Part shown: piece by piece, positions 1 through 19,640 of the stretch
How the letters are laid out: every line of letters starts with the position of its first letter
How positions within the stretch are numbered: the first letter of the stretch is position 1
From: Sminthopsis crassicaudata
Lineage: Eukaryota
DNA: 64,000 nucleotides
Assembly (NCBI RefSeq): GCF_048593235.1
Contig: NC_133619.1
Location: forward strand, 637,772,558 to 637,836,557
Direction: 5' to 3'
Program-made: the position numbers and the translations under genes
Notes under the pieces: generated by a model
Seen by the model: only the letters and a program-made list of their open reading frames with translations
What the model was told of the DNA's origin: nothing
Databases searched by the model: none

Positions 1-706
1 ATAGGATGGAGGGAGCAAATATGGAGGAGGATTGGGGAAATGATAGGTAGGGAGATGGGAAAAGTTGGGAGAGGGAGAAAGAGGAAGAGGGAAAAGAGTT
101 AGGGGGAGAAGAAAGAGAGGGAAGGGATCAGAAGAAGAAGAGGCGGAACCAGAGAGAAAGATGAGGAGAGAGAAACAGAGACAAAGGGGGAAGAACAGAG
201 AGAACAGGGGATAGAAAGAGATAAGAGAAGACAGGAATGGAGGGGGAGGAGGACAGAAAAATGATGGGTCGGTCCAAAAAGGAAGTATAATATAGAGATG
301 GAGGAAGAGATGAGAATAGGCCGGGAGGGAGGGGAAGAGAAAGGTGCTGGGGAAGGGAAAAGAGACAGGGAAAATTGATCTAAATAGAGAAGGTAAGGGA
401 AAGATTTGGAGAAAATTTGGTAGGGTAAGAAAGGGGAGAAAGAAGAAGCTGAGAGTAAAAGATTGGAGGGGAGACGGAGGAAAAAGGGAGAGATGCGCTG
501 GAGAAGGAGAGCCGGCATAAAGAGATCCAAGGGAGAAAGAAGGGAAGGAAAAGGGGGCGTGTTGGAAGGAAAGGGGGAGATGTGCCGGGAAGAGGCCGCG
601 AGGAGGGAAGTTGCGCACCCGGGGCGAGCTCAGGAGCTGCTGCTTTTGTGGAACCACTGGCTACAAGAGCCGCTTGCTGTCAACCTCCCTTAGGCTGAAC
701 CTTGCT

Positions 707-839
707 CTTTCAGTTTCCCTTTCCTGGTACCCCCCTTCTTACCTGAAGACACCTGGCCCCGCCCCTTCCGCAGCGGGATTTTTGGAATCTGTTTCCACTT
801 TTCATACATCAGAGGATTATCCGGCTCTGCCGCTTAAAA
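707..839 (+). promoter_or_regulatory. Proximal promoter of IFNL copy 1: ISRE/IRF element, GC box, TATA-like TTAAAA
   Basis: ctttcAGTTTCccTTTCc at 707-724 reads GAAA-GG-GAAA-CT-GAAA on the - strand. A GC box ccccgcccc lies near 757-765 and ttaaaa at 834-839. Confidence 0.7.
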
Positions 840-893
840 GTGCAGGGATGAAGCGGTCTCCTGCATCACTTGTCACCTCACTTCTCCAAGGCC

Positions 894-2211
894 ATGAGGA
901 CTCCGCAGACTCTCCCGCTGCTGCTTTGTGCCCTGATGTCAGGGGCGATTTCGAAGTCCCTGGCCCCGACTCCCAGCAGCCTTCCCCCCGAGAGGAGCTT
1001 CCAGATCAGCCACTTCAAGTCTCTTTCGCCTCGGGAGCTGGAAACCTTCAAGGTGGCCCAGAATGCCTACGTGAGTTCCTGGAGTGATTTTTGTACCCCA
1101 CTCCTCCCATCCCTCACTTCCCGGGGTCTAACCTCGACCTCTTTTACTGCGCTCTAATATTATCTCTGGCACTGAGATCTAACCTTCATTTTTCCTTCTT
1201 GAACTCTGTCGCTTTCTCTGTTTCTAACCTCCGTCCTACATCGCAAGGACCTAGAAGAGTCACAAGCCTTTAACTCTTTCCTCTTCATCCCCCAAAGGAG
1301 AAGATCATGATTCAGACGGAGAGGAAATGTAGCTCCCGATTCTTCCACAGAAACTGGGACCTTCGGCAGCTGCCGGTAAGAAGGGGCGCTCCCCACCTGT
1401 CAGTCCCCCATCGCCTGTCTCCGAAATCTGTAGCCTCCCCATTTCTCTTCCCCCATCTGTCGGTCCTCCCCGTCTCCTTCCCCTGTCCCCTTCATCAGCC
1501 TCTCCCTCACATCGCCTCTCATCTCTCCCCTCACAGCCGTCCGTCCGGCCCCTGGTCTTACAGGCTGAGCTGAAATTGACTCTGAACGTCTTGAAAGCCG
1601 TAACCAAGCCTGAGCTGGACAGAGTTCTGGCTCAACCCCTACAAACGCTCAGCCACATCTACCAAGAGATCCAAAGCTGTGTGAGTACTGGAGGATGGGC
1701 GGGGCTCCCCTGGACCAATGGGCATGGAGCTGTTCCCTGTCTCTCAGGCGCCTCTGTCCCTTGCAGTGAGGCTGAGAGGCTGCAATACCTGGATTCCTCC
1801 CTCTCCCCCCACCCATCAAGTACCCGAGTTCCCCTTCTCTTTTATCAAGTCCATCCTCTCCCTACACAGGTTACTTCCAGGCCCTCTAAGGAACACAGGC
1901 CTCCAGGCCGCCTGAAGAATTGGCTGAACAAGCTCAGTGAGGCCAGAAAGGTGAGTCAGGAAAGCTTCAGATCTACGGAGGGCACCCGGGGATGGAGGGG
2001 AGGAGTCAGAGGGGACCCCAGAGCCTGGGCAGCAAGAGACTCTGCCCACCCCCCAGAGAGGAGGAGGACTCTGGATTGCCCAGAGGAACCTTACCCCTGT
2101 GTCTCTTCTCTTTAGGAGCCTTACAATTGCCTAGAAGCATCGATCATGCTCAATCTCTCCGGAATCCTGATCCAAGACCTCCGATGTGTAGCCTATGGGG
2201 ACCTCTGTTGA
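894..2211 (+). CDS. IFNL: Interferon lambda (type III IFN) copy 1, 5 exons, 191 aa; divergent A-type (Cys36Phe, helix F NLSGILI)
   Basis: Exons 894-1070, 1298-1375, 1537-1680, 1870-1950 and 2116-2211 have GT-AG phase-0 introns. The product has a hydrophobic signal peptide and the IFN-lambda motifs HFKSLSPREL, WDLRQL, AELKLTL..L, QPLQTLSHI, GRLKNWL..L.EA and CLEASIMLNL...DLRCVA.GDLC*. Exon sizes match the human IFNL architecture. Confidence 0.95.
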
Positions 2212-2261
2212 AGATGCAGACTCAACCTGATGTCTGAGCCTGGACTTTTGCACTCCAAACT

Positions 2262-2385
2262 TTATTTATGGACCAATACCCTTCTAATATATTTATTCCT
2301 TCCACCCCCCAACAACCACATACTTTATATGCCACAGGATAGTTTTGTGCTTTTGTATTTTTTTTTCTATATTTTGTTAAATAAA
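2262..2385 (+). terminator. IFNL copy 1 3'UTR AU-rich elements and poly(A) signal
   Basis: ttatttat at 2262-2269, a second tatttatt near 2290 and AATAAA at 2380-2385. The same arrangement follows all five copies. Confidence 0.7.
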
Positions 2386-2439
2386 TAAGAAAACACAAAA
2401 AAATCGAAGGCCTGTCTGTTGTTTTGTAGTTGTTTTCTG

Positions 2440-2760
2440 TGTGACAGTTTGTGGCTATGAGCTAGTGTGGTTGTGGATTTCTGTGTATCTGTGAGCAGGT
2501 GGGATTGTGGATTTGTGGGTTTGTGTGTGTACTTGAGGATCTGTGTATGGCTGTGAACAGGTAGGGTTATGGATTTGTGAGCACAGTTGTGGGTTTGTGT
2601 ATATAGTCAAAAGGTCTGAGTATGGCCGTGAGCTGTTGGGATTGTGAGTCTGTCTATGTGTGTGTATGTAGTTGTAGGTTTGTGTATGGCTGTGAGCTGG
2701 TGGGATTATGGATTTGTATGTATGGCTATAATGTGGGAATGTGGGAATGTGTTCAGTGAC
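2440..2760. repeat. Degenerate TG-rich minisatellite downstream of IFNL
   Basis: Recurrent units like gtatggctgtgagctggtgggattgtg. Paralogous arrays of different length lie near 21240-21420, 29490-29810, 48290-48470 and 56530-56860. Confidence 0.7.
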
Positions 2761-3789
2761 CTGGATCTCAGTGTGGGTGCAGTCTGGGTCTCCTTTGACC
2801 TTTCTTGTGGGCTCCACTTTGCTGGGAAAGTAGTACCTGGGATGGAAAATTAGATGATTGCATCGAATAGGGTCTCAAGTCAATCAATACTGGCTGACTC
2901 TGAGTGAGCCCCTTGGGCATAGGTGATAGGGACCGGGCAGTCAGGGTGCCCTCTTAGAGGAGCCAGCTGGATGCTGGAGTTGGGAGACCATTAGACATAA
3001 GGAGACTTCTTGATTCAGTGTCCTCCCATCAGAAAGAAGACAGTCCATGGGATTTGTGCAGAACAAAGACCTTATGGTATTTACACACTAATTTGGTTCT
3101 TCCTCTTCCCCAATCAGATCAATTGAAGATAGAGCATAAAGTAAGGGGGGAGCAGAAAACAGAGTAATGAAGGAAATGCTTATTAAATAACAAATTATTG
3201 CAGAGATTTCTGACCTTACCCAGAATATGGGCTACCTATCATGTCAAGTTGCAGTTGTTTCCCCATCCAAATAGAAAAACCTTTCAAAGAGATTCTAGTC
3301 CCAAGAAATCCAATCTTCTCTGTTTTAGTCTGCCAAAACTGAGTAGAGGCAGACCCCCTTTTGTCAAGACTTCCCATGTAGGGGTAGTTTGGATAAGAGT
3401 GAAGTCCCTTTGTCTAATACTGAGTGATCCAATCAAGTTTCCCCATTCCCTCATTAGAATAAGCCCACCTCTCATTATAATATTCATTCTTCTCATTAAT
3501 TGTTAACCTATCACAGTTATTGCCATCCTTAAGAACAACTAGTCTTCCAAGTGTATATGAGCATTGACTGGATTCTATAAGTGGTCTCTGGCACTCAGAA
3601 ATGCTTCTGACCTAAAGGGCAAAGACCACTTTAAAATAATTAGCTGCTATATGTATATGTGTGTGTGTGTGGGCGGTGAGTGTGAATATATATATCTGTG
3701 CTTACCAGTAGCTTACTTGGGAAAGGTGTAGGGAGAATAAAAGTGTAACCTACAGGGAACCAAAGGTAAACCCTCATGAATATTTTTTC

Positions 3790-5040
3790 AATGGTTATAT
3801 ATGCTTTCTTGAAATGAAAATTTTCTACATTTTGAATCTCTCTGATGTTCTGCTGGGCACATGTTTTGTTTTGTTTTTTTACTTTCCTTTTTTGTCCTTT
3901 TTCTTTATGTTAAAATACATATTAAATCCAATATATATATTTATACAATATATGTATTTATACATATATTTATACAGTTATCTTGTTGCACAAGAAAAAT
4001 TAGATCAAGAAGGAAGAAATAGAAAAACTGAGGAAGAAAACAAAATGCAAGCAAATAATGACAGAGAAAGTGAGAATGCTATGTTGGGGTCCACACTCTG
4101 CTCCCACAGTTCTCTCTCTAGTGTAGGTGGGTCTCTACATCACTGAACAAGTGGAACTGGTTTGAATCATCTCATTGTTGAAGAGAGCCACATCCATCAG
4201 AATTGATCATGGTATAGTCTTGTATAATTATCTCCTGGTTCTGCTCATTTCACTCAGCATTAGTTCATGTAAGTCTCTCCAAGTCTCTCTGAAATCATAC
4301 TGCTGATCATTTCTTACAGAACACTCATATTCCATAACATTCAGATACCACAATTTATTCAGTCATTCTTTAATTGATGGCCATCCACTCAGTTTCCATT
4401 TTCTGGCCACTATGAAAAGAGCTGCCACAAACATTTTTGCAAATGTGGGTCCCTTTCCCTCCTTTATGATCTCTTTGGAATATAAGCCCAGTAGTAACAC
4501 TGCTGAATCAAAGGATATGCACAGTTTATAATTTTTTTGAGAATAGTTCCAAAGTGCTCTCCAGAATGGTTGGATTTGTCCACATTTCCAACAATATGGT
4601 AACAATATGGTATCAGTGTCCCAATTTTTCCAAATCCCCTTCACCATTCAACATCATCTTTTCCTGTCATCTTGGCTAATCTAGAGGTATGTAGTGTTAT
4701 CTCAGAATTGTCTTAATTTGCTTTTCTCTGATCAATAGTGATTTGGAGCACCTTTTCATGTGACTGCAAATAATTTCAATTTCTTCATCTGAAAATTGTC
4801 TGTTCATATCCTTTGACCATTTATCACTTGAAGAATGACTTGAACTATTATAAATTTGAGTCAATTCTCTATATATTTTAAAAATAAGGCCTTTATCATA
4901 TTCTTTGTATGTGAAGATGTTTTCCCAGTTTATTGCTTCCCTTCTAATCTTGTCTGCATTAGTTTTGTTTTATCCAATAACTTTTTAACTTAATTTAATG
5001 AAAATTATTTATTTTGTAATCAATAATGATCTTCAATTCT
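3790..5040 (-). mobile_element. Old L1 3' fragment (ORF2 C-terminus plus 3'UTR)
   Basis: Degenerate ORF2 C-terminal peptides ([53 protein letters not shown]) in broken frames. Paralogues lie near 22480-23645, 30850-32090 and 49530-50695. Ends are approximate. Confidence 0.85.
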
Positions 5041-5848
5041 TTGGTCTTCTGTCCTCTTTCTAGATTTTTAAAAATTATTTTGTATTTAGGTCAATAAAAA
5101 AGATGTGCTAGCAATAATCTAATTATTAATTACCCAGAAGCTAAGTCTGTTGAACTTTTTATGTCATAGTAAGCAGGTAATAAGACATCATCAGAGTGAA
5201 AGTCACTGTATCCTATTATCTCTTTAGGAAGTGTGAAGGGTCCCTGATTAAATTGGAAGGGAATCCAAGCATTGGATACTTGAAAATCGGATATGACCTC
5301 GGTATCTCTGAGAAGACAAAGCCTGCTGCCTTTGATGAGAGCTAAGCAGTTCTAGGAAGAAGTTTGATTCCCAACTTTGTGAATCACAGCACTTTCACTT
5401 CTACCAGAGGAAAGGGCAGGGCCATAGTGGAGCCAGTGATTGATTTTTTCCCTCCCTCCATCATCAAGCCATGACTTTTTGCAGAGGCACTATTAATATA
5501 GGAGGATATGCCATAACCAATTCAAAATCTGGTTTAGCCCACAACTCCCTGGGTTGCTTCTGGACTCAGTCAGTCTTCCACCATGAAATGGCCTTTTTCA
5601 CTCTAAATGTTTCACAGGTAGTCAGTAACCATTTATTAAATGCTTACTGGATTTCAGGCATTAAGCTCTAGAAATTAAAAAAAAAAAAAAAAAGGTAAGG
5701 AATAATCATCTGATGGATGAATTCATCACTGAATCTTTTTTTTCAGGAAACACCAGTGCCACCCAAGCTGATTTTAAAATTTATTTTAATAGTATTTTAT
5801 TTTTTCCAAATACATGCAAAGATAGTTTGGTTCCCCCCCCCCCCCAAG

Positions 5849-5974
5849 TTGGGGTTAAGTGACTTGCCCAGGGTCACACAGCTAGGAAGTGTTAAGTGTC
5901 TGAGACCACATTTGAACTCCGGTCCTCCTGAATTCAAGGCTGGTGCTCTATCCACTTCACCACCTAGCTGCCCC
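5849..5974 (-). mobile_element. tRNA-derived marsupial SINE (WSINE1-like)
   Basis: The reverse complement reads ggggcagctaggtgg...gagttcaaatgtggtctcagacacttaacacttcctagctgtgtgaccctgggcaagtcacttaacccc. Direct repeats gatagttt flank it at 5821-5828 and 5975-5982. A copy lies at ~32893-33018. Confidence 0.85.
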
Positions 5975-6009
5975 GATAGTTTTTTTTTTAATTAAAATTT
6001 TTTATTTTC

Positions 6010-7784
6010 TCCAAAGAGATCTTAAAGGAGGGAAAGGACCCACAGGTTAAAAAAAATGTGTGTACTATCCCTTTTAGTAGTAGCAAAAAACTGGAAATTG
6101 AGTAGATGGATGCCCATCAATTGCAGAATGGCTGAATAAATTGTGGTATATAAATGTTATGGAATGTCATTGTTCTGTAAAAAATGACCAGCAGGATGAT
6201 TTCAGAGACGTCTGGAGAGACTTACATGAACTGATGCTGAGGGAAGTAGAAGTAGGAGATCATTGTACACATTGATCAATTCTGATGGTAGTGGCTCTCT
6301 TCAACAATGAGATGACTCAAACCAGTTCCAATGATCTTGTGATAGAGAGAGCCATTTGCCCTCAGAGAAGGGACTGTGGGAATTGAGTGTGGATCACAAC
6401 ATAGTGTTTTCACTCTTTGTTTGTTGTTTACTTGCATTTTATTTTCTTAAAGTTTTTTTCCTTTTTATTATGCCCAAAAAGTTATCAAACTGTGTATATC
6501 CTTTGATCCAGCACTGCTACTACTGGGCTTATATCCCAAGGAAATAATACTAAAGAAGGGAAAGGGACCTGTATGTGCCAAAATGTTTGTGGCAGCCCTT
6601 TTTGAAGTGGCTAGAAACTGGAAAATGAATGGATGCCCCTTAATTGGAGAATGGTTGGGTAAATTATGGTATATAAATGTTATGGAATGTTATTGTTCTG
6701 TAAGAAATGACCAGCAGGATGAATACACGGAGGCTTGGAGAGACTGACAGGAACTGATGCTGAGTGAAATGAGCAGAACTGGGAGATCATTATACACTTC
6801 AACAACAATACTATATGAGGATGTATTCTGATGGAAGTGGATATCTTCAACATAGAGAAGATCTAATCCAGTTCCAATTGATCAATGATGGACAGATTCA
6901 GCTACACCCAGAGAAGGAACACTGGGATATGAATGTAAACTGTTTGCATTTTTTTTTTTTGCTCCCCAGCTTATTTTTACCCTCCGAATCCAATTCTTCC
7001 TTTGCAACAACAACAACAACAAAAATTTGGTTCTGCACACATATATTGTACCTAGGATATACTATAACATATTTAATATGTATAGGAGTGCCTGCCATCT
7101 AGGGGAGGGGGTGGAGGGAAGGATGTGAAAAATTCGGAACAGAAGGGAGTACAAGGGATAATGTTGTAAAAAATCTGTGCATATGTACTGTCAAAAAAAG
7201 TTATAATTATAAAATTAATTTAAAAAAATAAATAAATAAAAGTTTTTTCTTTTTGATTTGATTTTTCTTGTGTGTGAAGCAAGATAATTGTATAAGTATG
7301 TATGCATATATTGAATTTAATGTATATTTTACATGCTTAACATATATTAGATTACTTGCCATCTAGGGGAGAGGATGGAGGAAACAGGGGGGGAAACTGA
7401 AACACAAGATTTTCAAGGGTTAATGTGGAAAAATAATCCAACCATATATTTTTTCTTTTTTTCCCCCAAGCATATATTTTTAAAAAGCTTTAATAAAAAA
7501 CTTTTTATTTTCAAAATATATGCCTATCGTTTCAACAATGAGTTGATTTGGGCCATTTCCAATGATCTTGTGATAGAGACAGTCATTTGCACCTAGTGAA
7601 AGGACTGTGAGAAATCAGATTGCATCACAACATAGTGTTTTCACTCTTTTTGTTGTTGTTTGCTTGCATTTTGTTTTCTTTCATATTTTTTTCCTTTTTG
7701 ATCTGGTTTTTCTTGTGCAGTATGATCATTGTGGAAATAAGTATAGAAAAATTACACATGTTTAACATATATTGGATTGCTTGC
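6010..7784 (+). mobile_element. Nested L1 3' fragments
   Basis: Several ORF2 C-terminal and 3'UTR pieces. A younger piece (~6478-7240, ending in an A-rich tail) sits inside an older L1 3'UTR. Duplicated at ~33055-34825. Confidence 0.8.
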
Positions 7785-8348
7785 TGTGAGGGATGTAGAA
7801 GACTCTTATCCAAAATGATTACTCAGAAATCACTCAGTAGAAGGCAGAAAAGTTGTTTATTGAAAACCTCCAGAGGATGACCCGTCCCATCAAGAGATAA
7901 GAAAAAGAAAGCTCAAGGTAAGAGGGCTAAAGAAGTAGTAAAGATACATAGCTTTTCGACAAGAAATTACATCACAAGGAAGAGAGCATTGAGAAGGGGA
8001 GGAGGAGGCATCTAATTGGTTATTGCTATTTGGAGAGATTGGAACGGAAGGTTTCTCTTTCCTAAAAAACTCCTGATTTCTAGAAAATAGAAAATTAGTC
8101 CTTCAGGCTCAATCAAGCAGATAGTAGTCCAGCTAATAGACTAAATATCGATAAATGTCAAATACTGATAAATGTCATCAGTTCAGCTTAAGTAAATACG
8201 GTTATAGCTGGCCAAGGCTCAAGTAAATATGGGCCTGCACATATTATACAGGTCATAGGGGAAACACAGAAATAATGAAAATGAAATACAGAAAAAGAAT
8301 TCACATATTCTTGTAAGTTCTTCACCTTATCTTGCTCTATTCCCCACA
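7785..8348 (-). mobile_element. Solo LTR (564 bp) inserted in an old L1 3'UTR
   Basis: TG...CA termini with imperfect inverted repeats (tgtgaggga / ttccccaca) and a 5-bp TSD cttgc (7780-7784) / tttgc (8349-8353). AATAAA is on the - strand near 7855. The flanks rejoin as the L1 motif ttgccatctagggg. Confidence 0.8.
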
Positions 8349-9629
8349 TTTGCCATCTAGGGGAGGGGGTAAAGAAAAGGAAGGGAAGAAAATTTGAAAC
8401 ACGAGTTTTTGCAAGGGTAAATGTTGAAAATCATCTATGCATATGTTTTGCAAATAAAAGTTTTAATAACAAAAGAAAATAATTAAAAACATACATGCAT
8501 AATTAGTATTAATATTCACCCTTGCAAAATGCAAAGATAACTTTCAACATTCACTTCTGTAAAATTTTGTCCAAATTTTTCTTCCTGTCTTCCCCTCTCT
8601 CCCGACCCAAGAGAGTAAGCAATCTGATACAGATTAAACATGAGCAATTTTCTAAACATATTTCCACATTTTTCATCTTTTCCAAGAAAAAACAGATAAA
8701 AAGGTAAAAAAAAAAAAATGAGAAAAAACAAGGAAACAAACAATAATAACAACAAAAAGATGAAAATAATCTCCTTTCATTCATATTCAGTCTTCATAGT
8801 TCTCTCTCTGGACGCACATGGTATTTTCTATCCCAAGTCTATTGGAATTGCCTGGAATCTGCGCATTATTTAGAAGAGCCAAATCCAGGACAGTTGACCA
8901 TGACATAATCTTGTTGTTACTGTGTGCAGTGTTACTCCAGTTCTGCTCATTTCCCTTAGAATCAGTTCATAAGTCTTTCCAGATCAAATACTATTCAAAT
9001 CAGATTCTAGCCCCTGACTCCCCAGGCTCTTTCCAGATTTCTTGCTTGGAGTACCTCCTGCCCATATTTTTAGCCACTCTCCCCTACTCCACTTTCCCTA
9101 GTTGTCTTCCCTCTTTAGAAGAGAAGCTTCCAGAGGGCAGGGACTTCCTTTTATTTTGTTTATATTTAGCACTAGGTCTGACACCTAGTAAACACTTAAT
9201 AAATGTTATTTCCCCCCTAGCTATTGCTTTTTCTTTTAGTAATTTGGATTTTTTTCATATCTCTGTTGATAACTTGGTTTCTTTCCTTTGAGAACTGCCT
9301 GTTCATATCAATGGGCCACTTCTTAATAGGGGAAGAAATTCACCATTTTTCTTTACAATACTGTTCAGGATATACAATGATTCTTTTTGGAAAAAAAATA
9401 GATTGGTAACTTTTGTTTTAATATCACTTATGTTTTCCCATGTACCTTTCATCCTGTCCTTTCCAGAGAGTCATATATGAACATTTTTTTTTAAGAGAAA
9501 GGAAAAAAATCAAAAGTGATTATGGAATCACTTGAAAAATCTGACTGTGCAAGCATTGCTCTACACCCTTGGCCTCCCAGGCTTGTTCTTTGCAATGCTG
9601 GACTATTTTTTCATGATTGTGGCAGTTCT

Positions 9630-10160
9630 TTTCATTTACTCTGTGTTGTCAACCCAACAGGCCCTTTTAAGCTGCTCTGTCAGGCAGTGTACTAAGCACT
9701 GGGGATACAAAGAAAAACAAAAGACAGTCCTTCAAGGATCTCACAGTCTACTGACTATAGGGAACAAGAAGCAAATGACCAGCTAAAAATAAGCTAGTCA
9801 CAAGTTGAATTAAAGATAATCAACAGAAGAAAAGCACCTGGTTTTAAGGAAAGGCTCCTTAGAGAAAGTGAGATTTTAGCTTTGACTTGAAGGAAGCCAG
9901 TCAAGCCAAGAAGCAGAGATGAGGAGGTAGAAAGTTCCAGACATGGGGAAGGATGCCCAATGAAAATGCCAGAGAACATAGATTACCTGCTTGAAAGAAG
10001 AGCAAGGAAAACTGTCAGTGGAAAACAAAGCAAAGGGAAGGGAGAAATATGTAGTAAGTCTAGAAAGGGAAGCAGACACCAGGTTAGGAAAGCCTTCAAA
10101 CAGAGGATTTTATCATTGATCCTGGAGAAAACAGGAAACCTCAGATTCATTGTCCTTTAG
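9630..10160 (+). mobile_element. Ancient L2-like fragment
   Basis: Degenerate motifs such as actaagcactggggatacaaag...gacagtcc...tcacagtcta, recognised by pattern only. Confidence 0.45.
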
Positions 10161-10269
10161 TATATTTTTTCCTTGACTCTGCTTGTTTTAGTCTGCCTCC
10201 ATTCATTTAAGTTATAAGGCAGTTAAAGTCCATTATATTCATGTACCATATTGTATTTAGCCATTCCAT

Positions 10270-10550
10270 GATTAATGGGCAGGGACAGTTGGGTAGGGAA
10301 GCAGATAGAATATTTGGTTTGGAATCAGGAAGACTCATCATAAATTCATTTGAAATACCTACTGGCTGTGTGACCTCAAACAAGTCATTTACCTTGTTTG
10401 CCTTGTTTGCCTTTGTTCGTCTATAAAATGATCTGGAAAAGGAAATGGCAAACTGATATCTTTGCCAAGAAAAAAAAAAAAAACGCAAAATAGGGTCACA
10501 GAGAGTCAGAATGAAACATTTAACAAAAGTCAATGGACATTTATTTTGTT
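10270..10550 (+). mobile_element. MAR1/MIR-like CORE-SINE
   Basis: ggaatcaggaagac...tgtgtgacctcaaacaagtcattt...ctataaaatga...tggaaaaggaaatggcaaac...tctttgccaagaaa...gggtcacagagagtcaga. Confidence 0.65.
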
Positions 10551-10584
10551 TCCAGTTATTTTTTACTACCAAAAAAAGTGAAAA

Positions 10585-10728
10585 GTAGCTGGATGGTATA
10601 GTAGTTAAAGTATGGTTCTTGGAGTCAGTAGGACCTGAGTTCAAATGTGACCAGACACTTAACACTTCCTAGCTATGTGACCCTAGGTAAGTCACTTAAC
10701 CCTAACTTTTTCAAGAAAAAAAAAAAAG
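10585..10728 (+). mobile_element. WSINE1-like SINE
   Basis: ggacctgagttcaaatgtgaccagacacttaacacttcctagctatgtgaccctaggtaagtcacttaaccc followed by an A tail. A copy lies at ~37626-37769. Confidence 0.8.
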
Positions 10729-13298
10729 ATGTAATATTTTGGTGTATATAAATCCTTATTTCATATCAATGAAATCTCTGGGGTATATGTCTAGCAATGG
10801 ACTCTGGGTCAAAGAGCATGGACTAAAAGCTAAAAAGCTTAATTTGCATAAAACACAGTTGCTCTTTTAAATGGTTGTACTAATTCACAACTCCACCAAC
10901 AATGCATTTATGTACTATCTAATACTTGTCCAAAAACTGACTTTTTCCAGTTGTTGTCATCTTTGACAGATCTCTGGAGAGGAAGTAAAACCTCAGAGTT
11001 GTTTTGAATTGCCTTCTACTTAAATAGTGATTTGAGGAATTTTCTTATGTGATTGTATTTATTTGTAATTTTTCTTCTGAGAACTGTGCACTGTTCTAAG
11101 AACTTTTGACCATGTATCTGTTGGAGAACTGTCTATTAAAGTTAAGTACACTGGTGGGGGTTGGTGAGCTATAGTTTTTGAAGAGCAAATCCATAGGCAG
11201 TTCTGTGAATCTGAAGTAGTAGCCACTTCCTTCTCCACCTTCCAACTTTTATTCCCAGCCTGAGATCTATCCTGATACCTGCAAGTACCAAATTGGGAAG
11301 AATCAACTAAAGAAGTGTAGATTCCATAGAAAGGAGATTACTGTGACATTTTTACTTTCTCGGGATGATGTCTACACAACAGGGTAGTAGCACAAGTCTT
11401 GAGGAGATTGGGTGACCCTGAAAACAACATCAAATTCAGATCTTTTCCATTAAGAGATGTTGGGTTTTCTCTTTCTGCACTGGTTTATTTAGCATTTTAT
11501 GTGTGTTTTCTACATGATCAAATAAAAGTCACCTCATCCCTACAGTTCATATTATACATTAAATATCTGTATGAGTTGGGGACTGTATACATTTAGAGAA
11601 ACTGAGTCATGGGCTATGATTTATTTTGGAGTCTTTCCTGGATTAATTCCAGGAATGTGTGTGGGGAAGATTAAAGAAAAGAAAGTGAATTCTTTGGAGT
11701 TCTTCAGAATAGGAATATTTCATGTGAGTTTATAATTTTCATGGGGGAGTGAGGAAAGGGTTCACATGTTACAAATACACATGAAGATTAAATTATTTAA
11801 AATTAGGAAAAGATATAATGGGCAATTAAAGTAGTTTCCTCAATTTGAGTTATTGACATCCCCAAATAGAAAATGGATGAAGGAACAGATATTGACTCAG
11901 ATAATAACAGTTTCTTACAGAAGTTTAGCCTCTGTAAATCAAAGGAGTCTATAAACCACTTGAGTCCATCTCATTGTCTGATCTATTTGCCAAGTAGAGA
12001 GATGTAGTAGCTAAGGGCAGTGCCAATTTTACAATAGAAAAGTGTAAAATGGTAAGGAAGAGTTTGAACAGTATCAATTCAGCAAAGCAAAGAAATTTCA
12101 AGAAAGCTTGGCAAGATATTGGCAACTAAAAACATTCATCCTGAGGACATTTAAAGATAAAAGTGGAAGATAACAAAAGATTAAAGTTGAGAGAGAGGTA
12201 CATATTTTCATGTAACACTTATTGACTGTGTGTGACACTTGGTGAGTACTCCATGTGTCAACTGGGCCACAGCAGCTAGGTAAGAAGTCTAAGTCATCAA
12301 TTTTAGTGTCATCATCCTGTGAAACCCCCATCAAATCAGTATCCCTTGATTCATCGGGGGAAGGGAGAGGACAGCATATTTGAATGGTCCACCAGATGGT
12401 GCTATATTCAAGTCACCAACCAAGTGGTCTCATCAGGGTCTCTTTGGCACCAAGCCTCCCCTACTGCACCAAGCAGTCTGGCTCTAAACAAATGGGCAAG
12501 TAAGCCAAAACAAAACTTGACCAAAAGTTGGATCTATTCTGAATAGATTCTGAATTTAAATTAGAGAATTATGAAATATTAAAACATTAAAATCTGAAAT
12601 CATTGGTCTTCACAGAACTCAAAGTCCTCCAACCCTTCTCCTGGACTTTAGTTTATCAGCTGAAACATCCTCTTTTCTCTCAATTCATAACACTATGGCC
12701 ACATAACAAAAAATGTAGGGAAAAGGATTCAGAGTGCTGTCTTGATTTTAACCCCATTTAGATTCCCAAACTTTCTTTTCATTGCCTTTATTGCCATTTT
12801 TTTTTTTTTTGAGTTGTCAGAGGGATAATTTCAAAAAACTTGTATTCTGATCCTGCAGGTCATGGGAAAGACCAAGTATGTATTTGTGGGAAATATTGGG
12901 GAGGGAAGTTGTATGTCTGAGACCCCACTTCCTCAACAGAACTATGATTAGTGGAAGATGGGGAAAGAGAGGTTGGTAGATGGGTGTTGGTATCTCTTTC
13001 CCGACCAAAGGGATTTTCAAAAGTTGAACCTTCTAGCCACTAGTCTGTCATTACCATGGGTCTTGATTATTCCAACTGCTGTAGTTGTCTAATTTGGTGG
13101 GCCCAGTTCTCCCAGGACAGCCCTGATTATAGCAAGTCCCTTCAACCTGCCCCTCTCCCCACATCTTCAAAGGGTATCAGGAAATATCTCTTGAGATCAA
13201 AGGGGAACACAAGGGAGAAAATCAATTTTATGCCAAAGCAACAGTCTCTCTTCCTTTCTCCAATGTTAGGCTTGCCCTCTTGTCATGGAGATCTAATT

Positions 13299-16200
13299 TT
13301 TTTTTTCTTTTTTTTTATTTATTTAATTTAATTTTTAAAAATTTTTAAATTTTATAATTATAAAATTTTTGACAGTAAAAATGCATGAGTAATTTTTTAT
13401 AACATTATCCTTTGTATTAATTTTTCCAAATTTTCCCCTCCCTCCCTCTACTTTTTTTTTTTTTCATTTTTATTTTATAATTATAACATTTTTTTGACAG
13501 TACATATGCATGGGTAATTTTTTACAACATTATCCCTTGCACTTACTTCTATTCAGATTTTTTCCCTTCCTCCCCCAACCCCCTCCCCCAGATGGCAATC
13601 AGTCTTATATATGTTAAATATATTACAGTATATTCTAGATACAATATATGTGTGTAGAACCGAATTTCTTGTTGCACAGGAAGAATTGGATTCAGAAGGT
13701 AAAAATAACAGTTTACACTCATTTCCCAGTGTTCCTTTCCCGGATGTAGCTGGTTCTGTCCATCATTAATCAATTGGAATTGGATTAGCTCTTCTCTATG
13801 TTGAAGAAATCCACTTCCATCAGCATACATCCTCGTACAGTATCATTGTTGAAGTGTATAATGATCTTCTGGTTCTGCTCGTTTCACTCAGCATCAGTTG
13901 ATGTAAGTCTCTCCAAGCCTCTCTGTATTTCTCCTGTTGGTCATTTCTTATAGAACAATAATATTCCATAACATTCATATACCATAGTTTACCCAACCAT
14001 TCTCCAATTGATGGACATCCATTCATCTTCCAGCTTCTAGCCACTATGAAAAGGGCTGCCACAAACATTTTGGCACATACAGGTCCCTTTCCCTTCTTTA
14101 GTAGTTCCTTGGGGTATAAGCCCAGTAGTAGTATGGCTGGGTCAAAGGGTATGCACATTTTGATAACTTTTTGAGCATAATTCCAGATTGCTCTCCAGAA
14201 TGGTTGGATTCTTTCACAACTCCACCAACAATGCATCAGTGTCCCAGTGTTCCCACAGCCCCTCCAACATTCATCATTATTTGTTCCTGTCATCTCAGCC
14301 AATCTGACAGGTGTGTAATGATACCTCAGAGTTATCTTAATTTGCATTTCTCTGATCAATAGTGATTTGGAACACTCTTTCATATGAGTGGAAATAGTTT
14401 TAATTTCATCATCTGAAAATTGTCTGTTCATATCCTTTGACCATTTATCAATTGGAGAATGGCTTGATTTCTTATAAATTAAAGTTAATTCTCTGTATAT
14501 TTTGGAGATGAGGCCTTTATCAGAACCTTTAACTGTAAAAAATTTTTCCCAATTTGTTACTTCCCTTCTAATCTTGTTTGCATTAGTTTTGTTTGTGCAG
14601 AAACTTTTTAATTTGGTGTAATCAAAATGTTCTATTTTGTGATCAATAATGGTCTCTAGTTCTCCCTTGGACACAAACTCCTTCCTCCTCCACAAGTCTG
14701 AGAGGTAAACCATCCCATGTTCCTCCAATTTATTTATGATTTCGTTTTTTATGCCTAAATCTTGGACCCATTTTGATCTAATCTTAGTATGTGGTGTTAA
14801 ATGTGGGTCCATGCCTAGTTTCTGCCATACTAATTTCCAGTTTTCCCAGCAGTTTTTGTCAAATAATGAATTCTTATCCCAAAATTTGGGATCTTTGGGT
14901 TTGTCAAAGATTAGATTGCTATTTTTATTCACTATCTTGCCCTGTGAACCTAACCTATGCCACTGATCAACTAGTCTATTTCTTAGCCAATACCAAATGG
15001 TTCTGGTGACTGTTGCTTTATAATATAGCTTTAAATCAGGTACACTTAGACCACCTTCCTCTGGCTTTTTTTTCATTAGTTCCCTTGCAATTCTCGACCT
15101 TTTATTCTTCCATATGAATTTTGTTGTTGTTTTTTCTAGGTCATTAAAATAGTTTCTTGGGAGTCTGATTGGTATAGCACTAAATAAATAGATTAGTTTG
15201 GGGAGTATTGTCATCTTTATTATATTCTCTCGGCCTATCCAAGAACACTGAATGTCTTTCCAATTATTTAAATCTGACTTTATTTTTGTGGCAAGTGTTT
15301 TGTAATTTTGCTCATATAATTCCTGACTCTCCTTTGGTAGATATATTCCCAAATATTTTATACTATCGACTGTTATTTTGAATGGAATTTCTCTTTGTAT
15401 CTCTTGCTGTTGGATTGTGTTGGTAATGTATAAAAATCCTGAGGATTTATGTGGATTTATTTTGTATCCTGCGACTTTGCTAAAATTCTGAATTATTTCT
15501 AATAGCTTTTTAGCAGAGTCTTTGGGGTTCTCTAAGTATACCATCATGTCATCTGCGAAAAGTGACAATTTGATTTCTTCATTTCCTACTCTAATTCCTT
15601 GAATCTCTTTCTCGGCTCTTATTGCCGAAGCTAGAGTTTCTAGTACTATATTGAATAGTAATGGTGATAGTGGGCAACCTTGTTTCACTCCTGATCTTAC
15701 AGGGAAAGGTTCTAGTTTATCACCATTACATATGATGTTTACTGAAGGTTTTAAATATATGCTCCTTATTATTTTAAGGAATAGTCCATTTATTCCTATA
15801 CTCTCAAGCGTTTTTAGTAGGAATGGATGTTGGATTTTATCAAATGCCTTTTCTGCATCTATTGAGATGATCATATGGTTTTTATTAATTTGATTATTAA
15901 TATGGTCAATTATATTAATAGTTTTCCTAATATTAAACCAGCCTAATATTAAATCCCACTTGGTCATAGTGCATTATCCTGGGGATGATTTTCTGAAGTC
16001 TATTTGCTAATATCTTATTTAAGATTTTAGCATCAATATTCATTAAGGAAATTGGTCTATAGTTTTCTTTCTCAGTTTTTGATCTACCTGGTTTAGGTAT
16101 CAGTACCATGTCTGTGTCATAGAAGGAATTTGGTAGGACTCCTTCAATCCCTATTTTTTCAAATAGTTTACATAGCATTGGAGTTAGTTGTTCTTTAAAT

Positions 16201-18339
16201 GTTTGGTAGAATTCACCTGTAAATCCATCTGGTCCTGGGGACTTTTTCTTAGGAAGTTGGTTAATAGCTTGGTCTATTTCTTTTTCTGAGATGGGACTAT
16301 TTAGACTACTTACTTCTTCCTCTGTTAATCTGGGCAAGCTATATTTTTGGAGGTATTCTTCCATTTCATTTAAGTTATCGAATTTATCGGCATAAAGTTG
16401 AGCAAAGTAGCTCCTAACTATTGTTCTAATTTCCTCTTCATTAGTGGTGAGTTCACCCTTTTCATTTTCAAGACTATCAATTTGCTTTTTCTCTTTCCTT
16501 TTTTTAATCAGGTTTACTAAGGGTTTGTCTATTTTGTTGGTTTTTTCATAAAACCAACTCTTAGTTTTATTAATTAATTCAATAGTTTTTTTACTTTCAA
16601 TTTTATTAATCTCACCTTTTATTTTTTGAATTTCAAGTTTTGTGTTTGTCTGGGGGATTTTAATTTGTTCCTTTTCTAGCAATTTTAGTTGTAAGCCCAG
16701 TTCGTTGGCCCTCTCTTTCTCTATTTTATGCAAGTAGGCCTGTAGAGATATAAAACTTCCCCTTATTACTGCTTTGGCTGTATCCCACACATTTTGGTAT
16801 GATGTCTCATTATTGTCATTTTCTTGGGTGAAGTTATTAATTATGTCTATGATTTGCTGTTTTACCCAATCATTCTTTAGTATAAGATTATTTAGTTTCC
16901 AATTATTTTTTGGTCTATTTTCCCCTGGCTTTTTATTAAATGTTATTTTGATTGCATTATGGTCTGAAAAGGATGCATTTACTATTTCTGCCTTGCTGCA
17001 TTTGATTTTGAGGTTTTTATGCCCTAGTATATGATCAATTTTTGTATAGGTTCCATGAACTGCTGAGAAGAAAGTATATTCCTTTCTGTCTCCATTTAGC
17101 TTTCGCCAAAGATCTATCATATCAAACTTTTCTAGTATTCTATTTACCTCTTTGACTTCTTTCTTATTTATTTTGTGGTTTGATTTATCTAATTCTGAGA
17201 GTGCAAGGTTGAGATCTCCTGCTATTATAGTTTTGCTATCTATTTCCTCTTGCAGCTCTCTTAATTTCTCTTTTAAGAATTTAGATGCTGCACCACTTGG
17301 TGCATACATGTTTAATATTGATACTGCTTCACTATTGATGCTGCCCTTTAGCAGGATATAATGCCCTTCCTTATCTCTTTTAATTAGATCGATTTTTGTT
17401 TTTGCTTGATCTGAGATGAGGATGGTTACTCCTGCTTTTTTTGCTTTTGCCTGAAGCATAATAGATTCTGCTCCACCCTTTTACTTTTAGTTTGAATGTC
17501 TCACCCTGTTTCAGGTGTGTTTCCTGTAAACAACATATAGTAGGACTCTGACTTTTAATCCAGTCTGCTAACTGCTTCCTCTTTATGAGGCAGTTTGCCC
17601 CATTCACATTTATGGTTAGAAGGACTAATTCTATATTGCTTGCCATCCTATTAACCCCTGCTTATGCTTTTCCCCTTTCCTTCCCTTTTACCCTCCTATC
17701 CAGTATTAAACTGGTGAACACCACTTGCTTTTCACAGCCCTCCCTTTTTAGGATCCCTCCCCCACCTTAAAGATCCTCCCCTTATTTTACCCCTTTTCCT
17801 CGAAATTACTGTATTCCCTTGCCCTTAGCTTACTCCTTCCCTTTCACTTTTCAATGAAGTGGAAGAAGTTTCACCATAAATCGAATATGTCTATTGATAC
17901 ACGCTATGTTCATCTCCCTCCTTTCTTTCTCTCAGATATAATAGGTTACCTTTGCCTCTTCATGAGATGTAGTACCACCACTTTACACTTTTTTATGATA
18001 TAATCTCCTTTCCACCTCTAGTTGCTAAGACAAATTGTACATATGTTCTTTACATATTTTTTTGACAGAAGTATAGTTCTCAAGATTTCTTTTTACCTTT
18101 TTAGAAATCTCTTGAGTTCTGTATTTGAAGATCAAACCTTTTATGTAGGTCTGGTTTTTTCATCAAAAATAGATGGAATTCATTTATTTCGTTAAATGTC
18201 CATCTTCTTCCCTGGAAAACGATGCTCATTCTTGCTGGGTAAGTTATTCTTGGCTGCATACCAAGTTCCTTAGCCTTTCGGAATATCATGATCCAGGCCC
18301 TTCGTTCTTTTAATGTGGACGCTGCTAGATCCTGGGTTA
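13299..18339 (-). mobile_element. 5'-truncated young LINE-1 (ORF1 C-terminus, spacer, ORF2, 3'UTR, double A-tail), unit 1 copy
   Basis: TSD atggag(a/c)tctaatt at 13285-13298 and 18340-18353, and an ORF1 tail at 18101-18338 (AKELGMQPRITYPARMS). ORF2 EN, RT and C-terminal domains are present. An empty paralogous site atggaactctaattcaacaa lies at 25421-25440. Confidence 0.97.
13820..17646 (-). pseudogene. L1 ORF2 (endonuclease / reverse transcriptase), disrupted by two frameshifts
   Basis: The N-terminus 17646-~17450 (INVNG, CCLQETH) is separated by a +1 frameshift at the T-run 17445-17448. A second, net -8 bp lesion lies at 15944-15950 in the [14 protein letters not shown] motif. The RT motifs [10 protein letters not shown] and LFADDM are intact. 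Confidence 0.93.
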
Positions 18340-19503: not shown

Positions 19504-19640
19504 CTTTCAGTTTTCCTTTCCTGGTACCCGCCCTTCTTACCTGCAGACACCTGGCCCCGCCCCTTTCGCAGCGGGATTTTTGGAATCTGTTTCCACTTTT
19601 CATACATCAGGGGAATCTCCGGCTCGGCCGCTTAAAACTG
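19504..19640 (+). promoter_or_regulatory. Proximal promoter of IFNL copy 2: PRDIII-like IRF site, NF-kB site, TATA-like element
   Basis: ctttcagttttcctttcc at 19504-19521 contains GAAAACTGAAAG on the - strand. GGGAATCTCC at 19611-19620 fits GGGRNNYYCC, and ttaaaa follows. Identical motifs occur in copy 3 (27750-27767, 27857-27866), copy 4 (46554-46571, 46661-46670) and copy 5 (54800-54817, 54907-54916). Confidence 0.75.

What the first reader, a model, noticed from the sequence alone, without database searches (positions are those of the whole stretch)
2152..2172. A second class of IFN-lambda with a rewritten receptor-binding helix F and a new N-glycosylation sequon
Seen: copies 2, 4 and 5 encode NLFRLLT (aat ctc ttc aga ctc ctg acc). 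Copies 1 (2152-2172) and 3 (29205-29225) encode NLSGILI (aat ctc tcc gga atc ctg atc). That is four single-base changes in 21 nt, all non-synonymous (F>S, R>G, L>I, T>I), and F>S creates an N-L-S sequon. The ORF and splice sites stay intact. Established: the FNLFRLLT motif of helix F contacts IFNLR1 in human IFN-lambda structures, and this Phe (Phe158 in IFN-lambda3) is critical for activity. Inference: these copies are attenuated, receptor-retargeted, decoy or viral-antagonist-evading interferons, or early pseudogenes.
Basis: partly seen in the sequence, partly recalled or inferred. Interest (0 to 1): 0.8.

Follow-up and report, generated by a model that had tools for sequence, protein, structure and literature searches.

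The report
Dasyurid second interferon-lambda type
Two of the five interferon-lambda genes in this fat-tailed dunnart region carry an altered receptor-binding helix, and Tasmanian devil and antechinus share part of that change, so it looks like an undescribed, probably weaker-binding variant of a known antiviral cytokine rather than a one-off mutation.

Summary
The window comes from Sminthopsis crassicaudata and holds five intact five-exon, 191-aa IFN-lambda genes, all already annotated by NCBI as "interferon lambda-3-like".

- **The variant:** Copies 1 and 3 encode NLSGILI. Copies 2, 4 and 5 encode NLFRLLT.
- **Not independent:** Copy 3 is a crossover hybrid. It is copy-5-like up to intron 4 and copy-1-like from three bases before exon 5.
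- **Two ages of change:** R176G and L177I use the same nucleotides in the first-in-array IFNL gene of devil and antechinus (NLLGILTR). A shared intron site and a shared promoter site go with them, and all four states are derived relative to koala. F175S, T179I and the N-L-S sequon are dunnart-only.
- **Rarity:** In 131 other IFN-lambda proteins, Gly and Ile at these positions occur only in dasyurids, and Ser at the Phe position never occurs.
- **Receptor contacts:** Three of the four positions touch IFNLR1 in the human IFN-lambda3 complex. They include the hot-spot Phe and the Arg that forms a salt bridge.
- **Selection:** The devil-antechinus variant pair has dN/dS 0.43, like the canonical genes.
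- **Caveat on copy 1:** It alone has lost an otherwise invariant disulfide cysteine (C36F).

My best reading is an old or convergently evolved class with weakened receptor binding. Copy 1 may be decaying. Function was not tested.

The parts
894..2211 (+). IFNL copy 1 (class 2, first gene of the array). Exons are 894-1070, 1298-1375, 1537-1680, 1870-1950 and 2116-2211. The protein is P0053 / XP_074158689.
   Evidence: Gene model and intact ORF. Pfam IL28A hits every exon. The protein is identical to an NCBI model.
2152..2172 (+). Helix-F motif N173-I179 (NLSGILI) of copy 1, carrying F175S, R176G, L177I, T179I and the N-L-S sequon.
2113..2113 (+). Intron 4 position -3 (T). This non-coding state is shared by copy 1, copy 3, devil D1 and antechinus A1. 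Every canonical gene and koala have C.
768..768 (+). Promoter site (C) shared by copy 1 with the devil and antechinus class-2 genes. All canonical genes, copy 3 and koala have T.
999..1001 (+). Codon 36 of copy 1 is TTC (Phe). The other 76 of 77 aligned IFN-lambda proteins have Cys here. This is the N-terminal partner of the disulfide to the end of helix D.
   Evidence: Disulfide description from PMC4034011.
27938..29264 (+). IFNL copy 3, a hybrid gene with copy-5-like promoter and exons 1-4 and a class-2 exon 5. Exons are 27938-28114, 28341-28418, 28580-28723, 28913-28993 and 29169-29264. The protein is P0054 / XP_074158691.
29141..29166 (+). Crossover interval in intron 4 of copy 3 (copy-1 coordinates 2088-2113). 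Upstream, copy 3 follows copy 5. Downstream, it follows copy 1.
   Evidence: 121 of 125 informative sites are copy-5-like from 398 to 2088, then copy-1-like from 2113 to 2987.
29205..29225 (+). Helix-F motif NLSGILI of copy 3.
19692..21014 (+). IFNL copy 2 (canonical, NLFRLLT at 20955-20975). The protein is P0055.
46742..48064 (+). IFNL copy 4 (canonical). It is 100% identical to copy 2 over 1823 nt.
54988..56313 (+). IFNL copy 5 (canonical, NLFRLLT at 56254-56274). It lies next to SYCN, as the single koala and bilby IFNL3-like gene does. The protein is P0001.
395..57102 (+). Tandem duplication of about 27 kb. Region 395-30042 matches 27424-57102 at 99.06%. It carries copies 1-2, copies 3-4 and the start of a third unit with copy 5.
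57601..57933 (+). Syncollin (SYCN) coding region downstream of copy 5. It marks the ancestral end of the array.
   Evidence: tblastn with koala SYCN gives 78% identity, E = 1e-57.

Best explanation
NLSGILI is the dunnart version of a second type of IFN-lambda found in dasyurid marsupials. Its defining changes are Arg to Gly and Leu to Ile in helix F. These are followed by loss of the neighbouring hot-spot Phe, which became Ser in the dunnart and Leu in devil and antechinus.

The resident gene is copy 1. It is the first gene of the array, on the IFNL4 side. Gene conversion has made most of copy 1 resemble the dunnart's canonical copies, but the helix-F codons were spared. Copy 3 is not a second origin. 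An unequal crossover in intron 4, at the edge of a 27-kb tandem duplication, joined a canonical promoter and exons 1-4 to this exon 5.

Inferred mechanism: the protein keeps the IFN-lambda fold and the IL10RB side. It lacks the Arg that salt-bridges to IFNLR1 and the Phe that matters most for activity. It should therefore bind IFNLR1 more weakly and act as a low-potency or differently tuned agonist.

Shown: the sequence facts, the hybrid structure, the sharing across three genera, and purifying selection on the devil/antechinus pair. Inferred: single origin rather than convergence, weaker binding, and any use of the sequon. Copy 1 itself has also lost a conserved disulfide cysteine and may be decaying.
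For: - **Shared codons:** All three class-2 genes have GGA ATC. The Phe codon changed differently, to TCC in dunnart and TTA in devil and antechinus.
- **Derived states:** With koala as outgroup, the class-2 states at 768, 2113, 2161 and 2164 are derived, and two of these sites are non-coding.
- **Site counts:** 3 strict class-split sites plus 2161, against 0 sites of the opposite (control) grouping. The chance expectation is 0.15-0.4 coincidences, giving P(>=4) between 2e-5 and 8e-4.
- **Array position:** The class-2 gene is first in the array in devil, antechinus and dunnart.
- **Orthology in Dasyurinae:** Devil D1 and antechinus A1 are orthologous along the whole gene (distance 7.0% vs 7.6-10.8% to same-species canonical genes; ML support 99).
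- **Selection:** D1 vs A1 has dN/dS 0.43, below 1 at P = 0.02, like the canonical pair at 0.35.
- **Conversion mosaic:** Copy 1 vs copy 2 divergence is 7.8% / 1.9% / 7.3% / 0.8% / 6.0% across five successive blocks (chi-square P = 4e-9).
- **Hybrid copy 3:**
- **Survey of 131 other IFNLs:** Gly159 and Ile160 occur only in dasyurid class 2, and Ser158 never occurs.
- **Human IFNL3:IFNLR1 interface:** It includes Phe146, Arg147 and Thr150, which correspond to three of the four changed positions (PMC11742915 supplement). The Arg-180/Asp-91 salt bridge and Phe-179 as the top alanine-scan hit come from PMC7689341.
- **Fold retained:** The AF2 model of copy 3 places helix F at 165-190. Foldseek's best matches are IFN-lambda3 and IFN-lambda1, TM 0.86-0.88.
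Against: - The whole-gene ML tree puts all dunnart copies together (support 100). In no block is copy 1 closer to devil D1 than to dunnart copy 2. A single origin therefore needs concerted evolution that spared only a few sites.
- 54 sites support the species split, against 4 for the class split.
- Leu at the Phe position is tolerated elsewhere. Human IFN-lambda4 has NLLRLLT and binds IFNLR1 more tightly than IFN-lambda3. Ten other proteins in the survey also have Leu. Ile at the Thr position is common (18 of 131).
- The dunnart's own receptor is unknown and may compensate.
- Copy-1-lineage coding changes are 5 non-synonymous to 0 synonymous. They include C36F, which fits relaxed constraint as well as it fits adaptation.
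- No expression data were found. One study reported that no interferon was expressed in the devil transcriptomes it examined (PMC4662006).
Confidence: 0.55

Rival explanations
1. Convergent origin. The class-2 duplication happened only in the devil-antechinus lineage. Dunnart copy 1 is an independent, younger duplicate that acquired the same Arg>Gly and Leu>Ile changes, and lost the Phe, in parallel.
For: - The whole-gene ML tree has the dunnart copies monophyletic (support 100), with D1+A1 sister to the canonical devil and antechinus genes.
- 54 species-split sites.
- Copy 1 is nearer to copy 2 than to D1 in every block, including 2100-2180.
- The canonical Arg codon differs between lineages (AGA in dunnart, CGA in devil and antechinus). 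GGA could therefore have arisen by different steps.
Against: - It needs four identical parallel substitutions, and two of them are non-coding (768 and 2113).
- The chance expectation is 0.15-0.4, with P(>=4) below 1e-3. Even if both coding changes were driven by selection, P(>=2) is 0.01-0.06.
- There are zero sites of the control grouping.
- The gene sits in the same first-in-array position in all three species.
- Leu>Ile is too conservative to be an obvious target for parallel selection.
Confidence: 0.25
2. Decay in the dunnart. Whatever the class once did, the dunnart class-2 exon 5, and copy 1 in particular, is under relaxed constraint and on the way to becoming a pseudogene. F175S, the sequon and C36F are damage, not design.
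For: - C36F removes a Cys present in 76 of 77 aligned IFNLs. Its partner Cys133 is invariant.
- Ser at the Phe position is unseen in 131 other proteins.
- Copy-1-lineage coding changes are 5 non-synonymous to 0 synonymous. That outcome has probability about 0.25 under neutrality and about 0.055 at the family's usual dN/dS (my own calculation, not from a tool).
- The copy 1 branch is 1.4-1.9 times longer than the canonical branches.
- The sequon Asn is invariant and almost buried in the solved IFN-lambda4 complex (accessible area 17 square angstroms). A glycan there would more likely harm folding.
Against: - All ORFs and splice sites are intact.
- Copy 3 carries the same exon 5 with all cysteines present.
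- The copy 1 and copy 3 exon-5 blocks have diverged by about 1.8% since they separated. Exon 5 has only one further replacement and no stop or frameshift.
- The class is conserved under purifying selection in devil and antechinus.
Confidence: 0.3
3. Retargeting or antagonism. The altered helix F fits a co-evolved or duplicated dasyurid IFNLR1 or another receptor chain. Alternatively, the protein occupies IL10RB without productive IFNLR1 engagement and damps signalling. A further possibility is that it escapes a viral IFN-lambda-binding protein.
For: - The changes are confined to the IFNLR1 face. The rest of the protein, including the helix A and D regions, is canonical.
- Devil and antechinus class 2 gained an Arg one turn further along (Q180R, LGILTR). 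This looks like a re-positioned contact.
- The class has persisted for a long time.
Against: - No receptor sequence could be examined here.
- IL10RB is the low-affinity chain for IFN-lambdas (PMC7689341). A ligand with a weak IFNLR1 site is therefore a poor competitor.
- No second receptor for IFN-lambda is established.
Confidence: 0.1
4. Copy 3 is an assembly artefact. The 27-kb repeat is a false duplication of two haplotypes, so the dunnart has only one NLSGILI gene.
For: - Copies 2 and 4 are 100% identical, and the middle 18 kb of the units differ by about 0.03%.
- Only one assembly carries these proteins.
- Divergence from the parent copies is uneven: 0.24% for the 5' part of copy 3 vs copy 5, and about 1.8% for the 3' part vs copy 1.
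Against: - Copy 3 has unique states that neither copy 1 nor copy 5 has. For example, 2231 is G, the ancestral state, where copy 1 has T and copies 2, 4 and 5 have A. It also has nine private sites.
- Its flanks are those expected of a real unequal crossover.
- NCBI annotates all five genes.
Confidence: 0.12

Closest known systems
Human IFN-lambda3 / IFN-lambda1 (IFNL3, IFNL1; PDB 3HHC, 5T5W, 9BPV, 3OG6)
   Same: - Pfam IL28A family and a five-exon gene.
- Same fold (Foldseek TM 0.86-0.88, 47-50% identity).
- Same cysteine pattern in copy 3.
- Same genomic neighbourhood, between IFNL4 and SYCN.
   Different: - Helix F has Ser-Gly-Ile in place of Phe-Arg-Leu, and Ile in place of Thr.
- Three of these four positions are IFNLR1 contacts in the human complex.
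- There is a sequon on the invariant Asn.
- Copy 1 lacks Cys36.
Devil and antechinus first-in-array IFNL genes (XP_031817462.1, XP_051845002.1; NLLGILTR)
   Same: - Gly and Ile at the same two positions, encoded by the same codons GGA ATC.
- The same T at intron 4 position -3 and the same C at the promoter site.
- The same first position in the array.
- The hot-spot Phe is lost.
   Different: - They have Leu, not Ser, at the Phe position.
- They keep Thr, have Arg instead of Gln one turn further along, and have no sequon.
- They are distinct from canonical genes along the whole gene. Dunnart copy 1 is mostly homogenised with its neighbours.
Human IFN-lambda4
   Same: It is a natural IFN-lambda with a non-Phe residue at this position (NLLRLLT). 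It still signals through IFNLR1/IL10RB.
   Different: - IFN-lambda4 keeps the Arg (Arg163) and the Thr.
- It is only about 30% identical to IFN-lambda1-3.
- The dunnart genes are IFNL3-like throughout. A separate IFNL4 gene lies upstream of the window, according to an earlier scan note.
Naturally attenuated or low-affinity interferons (human IFN-lambda2 vs lambda3; IFN-lambda4 K154; type I IFN-epsilon and IFN-kappa)
   Same: These are paralogues or alleles of an interferon whose potency is lowered by a few residues (PMC7689341, PMC6181419). This is what I infer for class 2.
   Different: Those cases were measured, and this one has not been. None of them removes the helix-F Arg.

Membership tests
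Type III interferon (IFN-lambda1-3 type; Pfam IL28A, PF15177) | Sequence match to the IL28A family profile | tested here: met
   Each of the five exons of copy 1 hits PF15177 in order along the profile (E from 5e-4 to 1.6e-13). Exon 5 scores 27.6 bits, against 39.3 bits for canonical exon 5. The full-length proteins carry PF15177 in the database.
Type III interferon (IFN-lambda1-3 type; Pfam IL28A, PF15177) | Five-exon gene with intact ORF and splice sites | tested here: met
   Exons of 177/78/144/81/96 nt, AG/GT at every junction, and a 191-aa ORF in all five copies. The same structure is present in devil and antechinus genes.
Type III interferon (IFN-lambda1-3 type; Pfam IL28A, PF15177) | Helical class II cytokine fold matching solved IFN-lambda structures | tested here: met
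   The AF2 model of the copy 3 protein has mean pLDDT 78.8 and helices at 46-64, 89-105, 110-135, 146-158 and 165-190. The top seven Foldseek PDB hits are IFN-lambda3 or IFN-lambda1, E from 3e-10 to 6e-8.
Type III interferon (IFN-lambda1-3 type; Pfam IL28A, PF15177) | Conserved cysteines forming the three disulfides (36-133, 70-165, 184-191 in dunnart numbering) | tested here: inconclusive
   Copy 3 and all canonical copies have all six cysteines. Copy 1 has Phe36, the only non-Cys among 77 aligned proteins. The pairing is taken from PMC4034011, not measured here.
Type III interferon (IFN-lambda1-3 type; Pfam IL28A, PF15177) | Helix-F IFNLR1 contact residues Phe-Arg...Thr (Phe146, Arg147, Thr150 of human IFN-lambda3) | tested here: not met
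   Copies 1 and 3 have Ser, Gly and Ile here. The survey gives Phe in 116/131, Arg in 121/131 and Thr in 93/131. The contact list is from the PMC11742915 supplement.
Type III interferon (IFN-lambda1-3 type; Pfam IL28A, PF15177) | Signals through IFNLR1 + IL10RB and induces interferon-stimulated genes | not testable with these tools
   This needs protein expression, binding assays and cell assays.
Dasyurid class-2 IFN-lambda (defined in this report) | Gly-Ile (GGA ATC) replacing Arg-Leu in helix F, with T at intron 4 position -3 | tested here: met
   Copies 1 and 3, devil D1 and antechinus A1 have these states. All seven other dasyurid genes and koala do not.
Dasyurid class-2 IFN-lambda (defined in this report) | Orthology to devil and antechinus class-2 genes along the gene | tested here: not met
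   Apart from 768, 2113, 2161 and 2164, copy 1 groups with the dunnart canonical copies (ML support 100; block distances). Membership therefore rests on four sites and on array position.
Unprocessed pseudogene | Frameshift, premature stop or lost splice site | tested here: not met
   None in any copy. The only structural red flag is C36F in copy 1.

The most novel reading that the evidence does not exclude
Dasyurid marsupials have kept a dedicated low-affinity or differently tuned IFN-lambda for more than 20 million years. Its receptor-binding helix lacks both the salt-bridging Arg and the hot-spot Phe. Selection has protected those few codons against the gene conversion that homogenises the rest of the gene. 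Alternatively, the same rewrite evolved twice. Either way, this would be a natural experiment in tuning type III interferon potency through the IFNLR1 site. The dunnart has gone one step further, with Ser and a possible glycan. It has also recently placed the variant exon behind a canonical promoter, in copy 3.
Probability: 0.35. Interest if true: 0.75.

Novelty: new variant of a known kind. Interest (0 to 1): 0.55.

Why it matters
IFN-lambda potency is thought to be set by affinity for IFNLR1 and IL10RB (PMC7689341). Engineered high-affinity variants change antiviral strength. A natural paralogue that removes the two best-characterised helix-F contacts, yet stays intact under purifying selection in several genera, would show how evolution lowers or re-shapes type III interferon signalling.

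It would also supply ready-made variants for structure-function work. The dunnart is a laboratory marsupial model, so the question is testable.

The locus is also a clear example of gene conversion and unequal crossover shuffling a functional exon between promoters. If the dunnart copies are instead decaying, the finding becomes an ordinary case of birth-and-death evolution in an immune gene family.

Tried and rejected
- **Donor for the patch inside the window:** None found. Only the two exact copies match within 3 mismatches.
- **Clustering as proof of selection:** Rejected against the whole gene (P = 0.27). It holds only within the coding sequence.
- **Two independent NLSGILI origins in copies 1 and 3:** Rejected by the single-crossover mosaic.
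- **A continuous ancient island around exon 5:** Not supported. Even at 2100-2180, copy 3 is nearer to copy 2 (5 differences) than to devil D1 (10 differences).
- **Primary papers:** Gad 2009, Miknis 2010 and Mendoza 2017 are not held in the library. I used the Walter 2020 review and the supplement of the 2025 cryo-EM paper instead.
- **Bilby as a closer outgroup:** No DNA was available, so I used koala.
- **Literature search for a prior description:** Searches on marsupial or devil IFNL and on dunnart interferon found only a 2015 note of two devil IFNL genes, with no comment on helix F.
- **Receptor co-evolution:** Not testable, because no IFNLR1 sequence was obtainable from the window or the tools.
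- **Full-length window proteins:** They could not be referenced directly because the genes are spliced. I reached them through an exon-3 search that returned copy 5's own protein.
- **Conversion from IFNL4:** Not testable here. Human IFNL4 has NLLRLLT, with no Gly-Ile.
Full report
**What is there.** The NLSGILI coding string is at 2152-2172 and 29205-29225. The NLFRLLT string is at 20955, 48005 and 56254. No other match exists within three mismatches.

Each motif lies in the last exon of a five-exon gene. The exons are 177, 78, 144, 81 and 96 nt, all phase 0, with AG/GT junctions and an intact 191-aa reading frame in all five copies. Every exon matches Pfam IL28A in order along the profile. 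Exon 5 aligns to human IFN-lambda3 (3HHC residues 168-195), so that Ser175 falls on Phe179 in precursor numbering, which is Phe158 of the mature protein.

An exon-3 search returned a protein identical to copy 5. Searching with that protein showed the genome is Sminthopsis crassicaudata, the fat-tailed dunnart. NCBI already annotates all five genes as "interferon lambda-3-like", XP_074158689 to XP_074158693. The residue changes are F175S, R176G, L177I and T179I. N173-L174-S175 is the only N-x-S/T sequon in any of the eleven dasyurid genes I examined.

**Architecture: copies 1 and 3 are one origin.** Region 395-30042 matches 27424-57102 at 99.06% identity, a tandem duplication of about 27 kb. 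Copies 2 and 4 are identical over 1823 nt.

At sites where copies 1 and 5 differ, copy 3 follows copy 5 at 121 of 125 sites from 398 to 2088. It then follows copy 1 from 2113 to 2987. The switch lies in intron 4, at 29141-29166 in copy 3 coordinates. Copy 3 is therefore a crossover hybrid, with a canonical promoter and exons 1-4 joined to the variant exon 5. This agrees with an earlier scan note, which I tested here.

Copy 3 is not a fresh copy of today's copy 1. Their 3' parts differ by about 1.8%. At 2231, copy 3 keeps the ancestral G, where copy 1 has T and the canonical copies have A. SYCN lies just after copy 5 (57601-57933), as it does after the single IFNL3-like gene of koala and bilby. 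Copy 5 therefore holds the ancestral position, and copy 1 is the far, IFNL4-side end of the array.

**The variant is not private to the dunnart.** Among marsupial relatives, the Tasmanian devil (XP_031817462.1) and Antechinus flavipes (XP_051845002.1) each have one gene encoding NLLGILTR. Their other copies, and koala, wombat, glider, wallaby, bilby and opossums, have NLFRLLT-like motifs.

| Gene | Helix-F codons |
|---|---|
| Dunnart canonical | TTC AGA CTC CTG ACC |
| Dunnart class 2 | TCC GGA ATC CTG ATC |
| Devil / antechinus class 2 | TTA GGA ATC CTG ACC |

With koala as outgroup, the ancestral string is TTC CGA CTC CTG ACC. The class-2 states at four sites are all derived: 2161 (G), 2164 (A), the intron site 2113 (T) and the promoter site 768 (C). 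The class-2 gene is the first gene of the array in all three species. All eleven dasyurid genes are intact.

**Single origin or convergence?** In devil and antechinus, the class-2 genes are orthologous along the whole gene. Their distance is 7.0%, against 7.6-10.8% to same-species canonical genes. They share 17 strictly class-specific sites spread over the gene, and the ML tree supports them at 99.

In the dunnart the picture differs. The whole-gene tree groups all dunnart copies together with support 100. There are 54 sites that split by species and only four that split by class. In no block is copy 1 closer to devil D1 than to dunnart copy 2.

Divergence between copy 1 and copy 2 is strongly patchy across five successive blocks: 7.8%, 1.9%, 7.3%, 0.8% and 6.0% (chi-square P = 4e-9). 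That is the signature of gene conversion.

Four shared derived sites, against zero sites of the opposite grouping, is far more than chance predicts. The expectation is 0.15-0.4 coincidences, giving P(>=4) between 2e-5 and 8e-4. I favour one origin before the Dasyurinae-Sminthopsinae split, followed by concerted evolution in the dunnart that spared the helix-F codons (about 0.6). The published range of estimates for that split is 20.6-29.3 Mya (PMC5715987). Independent, parallel evolution remains possible (about 0.25). Either reading implies the helix-F change is not neutral noise.

**How unusual the residues are.** I surveyed 131 IFN-lambda1-3-type proteins from other species.

| Position (mature human numbering) | Residues seen |
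|---|---|
| Phe158 | F 116, L 10, M 2, Y 2, P 1; never S |
| Arg159 | R 121, H 4, G 4; all four G are dasyurid class 2 |
| Leu160 | L 126, I 4; the same four proteins |
| Thr162 | T 93, I 18, and others |

T179I is therefore ordinary, F175S is unique, and R176G with L177I defines the class. No other protein has a sequon here.

**What the residues do in the solved human complexes.**
- The PISA analysis deposited with the 2025 IFN-lambda3 ternary complex lists helix-F interface residues Phe143, Phe146-Arg147, Thr150-Arg151 and Asn154. Buried areas are 62.6 square angstroms for Arg147 and 76.4 for Thr150 (PMC11742915 supplement). Three of the four changed positions are therefore direct IFNLR1 contacts.
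- The Walter review describes Arg-180 (the same Arg) as forming a bivalent salt bridge with IFNLR1 Asp-91. [quoted passage not shown] It also notes that the Arg is kept even in IFN-lambda4 (PMC7689341).
- Human IFN-lambda4 reads NLLRLLT and binds IFNLR1 at 191 nM, against 850 nM for IFN-lambda3. Leu at the Phe position is clearly tolerated, so the loss of the Arg is the more telling change.
- Devil and antechinus class 2 gained an Arg one turn later (Q180R), which could partly compensate. The dunnart did not.
- The model of the copy 3 protein keeps the IFN-lambda fold, with an unbroken helix F at 165-190.

**Selection.**
- Devil versus antechinus class-2 genes give dN/dS 0.43 (13.5 synonymous and 19.5 non-synonymous differences), below 1 at P = 0.02. 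The canonical pair gives 0.35. In that lineage the class is a working gene.
- Within the dunnart, copy 1 versus copy 2 shows 8 non-synonymous and 0 synonymous differences.
- Polarised with the other species, copy 1's own coding changes are C36F, D102N, H163Y, F175S and T179I. Copy 3 shares F175S and T179I.
- Cys36 is Cys in 76 of 77 aligned IFN-lambdas, and its partner Cys133 is invariant. [quoted passage not shown] Copy 1 may therefore be structurally compromised. Copy 3 is not.

**The sequon.** The Asn is nearly invariant. In the IFN-lambda4 complex its accessible area is only about 17 square angstroms. It is also only 18 residues from the C-terminus. From general knowledge of N-glycosylation, which I did not test here, N-x-S sites this close to the C-terminus are used inefficiently. 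Occupancy is therefore uncertain. If a glycan is added, it is as likely to disturb folding as to block the receptor.

**Verdict.** The "second class" reading is supported and broadened. Its functional meaning remains an inference.

The most likely account is a dasyurid IFN-lambda type with a weakened IFNLR1 site. In the dunnart it survives only as a short protected patch, has been further altered there, and has been copied by unequal crossover behind a canonical promoter. Copy 1 may be decaying.

I found no published description of this class. The genes themselves are already annotated. Caveats are the uncertain origin (one event or two), the possibility that the 27-kb duplication is an assembly artefact, the absence of expression data, and the lack of any receptor data.

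Noticed in passing
window 999-1001: Copy 1 alone has TTC (Phe) where 76 of 77 aligned IFN-lambda proteins have Cys36. This leaves the invariant Cys133 without its disulfide partner.
   Followed up: yes
window 57601-57933: A syncollin (SYCN) coding region, 78% identical to koala SYCN, lies just downstream of copy 5. Koala and bilby have the same order, IFNL-SYCN-F-box gene, but with a single IFNL3-like gene. The dasyurid array therefore expanded on the IFNL4 side.
   Followed up: partly
window 2500-27000 vs 29500-54000: Divergence between the two 27-kb units falls in a gradient. It is about 1.1% at 2.5-4 kb, 0.34% at 4-9 kb and about 0.03% from 9 to 27 kb. The 5' part of copy 3 differs from copy 5 by 0.24%, while its 3' part differs from copy 1 by about 1.8%. 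A single clean duplication does not explain this. Later conversion, nested events or haplotype mixing in the assembly are possible.
   Followed up: partly
window 654-665 and L001, L003, L004, L006: All dunnart IFNL promoters share a roughly 12-bp segment with the devil and antechinus class-2 promoters that the canonical devil and antechinus genes lack. In the promoter block, both copy 1 and copy 2 are closer to devil D1 (about 10-11%) than to devil D2 (about 16%).
   Followed up: no
L003 9737-20195 (Antechinus flavipes): NCBI 'isoforms' X2-X5 of antechinus interferon lambda-3 (P0031) match exons 1-3 of the class-2 gene A1 and appear to take exons 4-5 from a downstream canonical copy. Only isoform X1 (P0057) is encoded wholly by A1. 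This is either read-through splicing between tandem genes or a merged gene model.
   Followed up: partly
L001 11442 and L003 11302: Devil and antechinus class-2 genes have Arg instead of Gln one helical turn after the lost Arg (NLLGILTR). They also share K149N and P162A. The new Arg could be a re-positioned receptor contact.
   Followed up: no
window 1-600: A long purine-rich (GA-rich) low-complexity tract runs up to the start of the copy 1 promoter and overlaps the left edge of the tandem duplication, which begins at 395.
   Followed up: no
protein survey (P0052, P0002, P0019, P0154, P0162): Leu at the hot-spot Phe position recurs in unrelated mammals, including Monodelphis, Chinese hamster, pangolin and water buffalo proteins, and in human IFN-lambda4. 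This Phe is less inviolable than the alanine-scan result suggests.
   Followed up: partly
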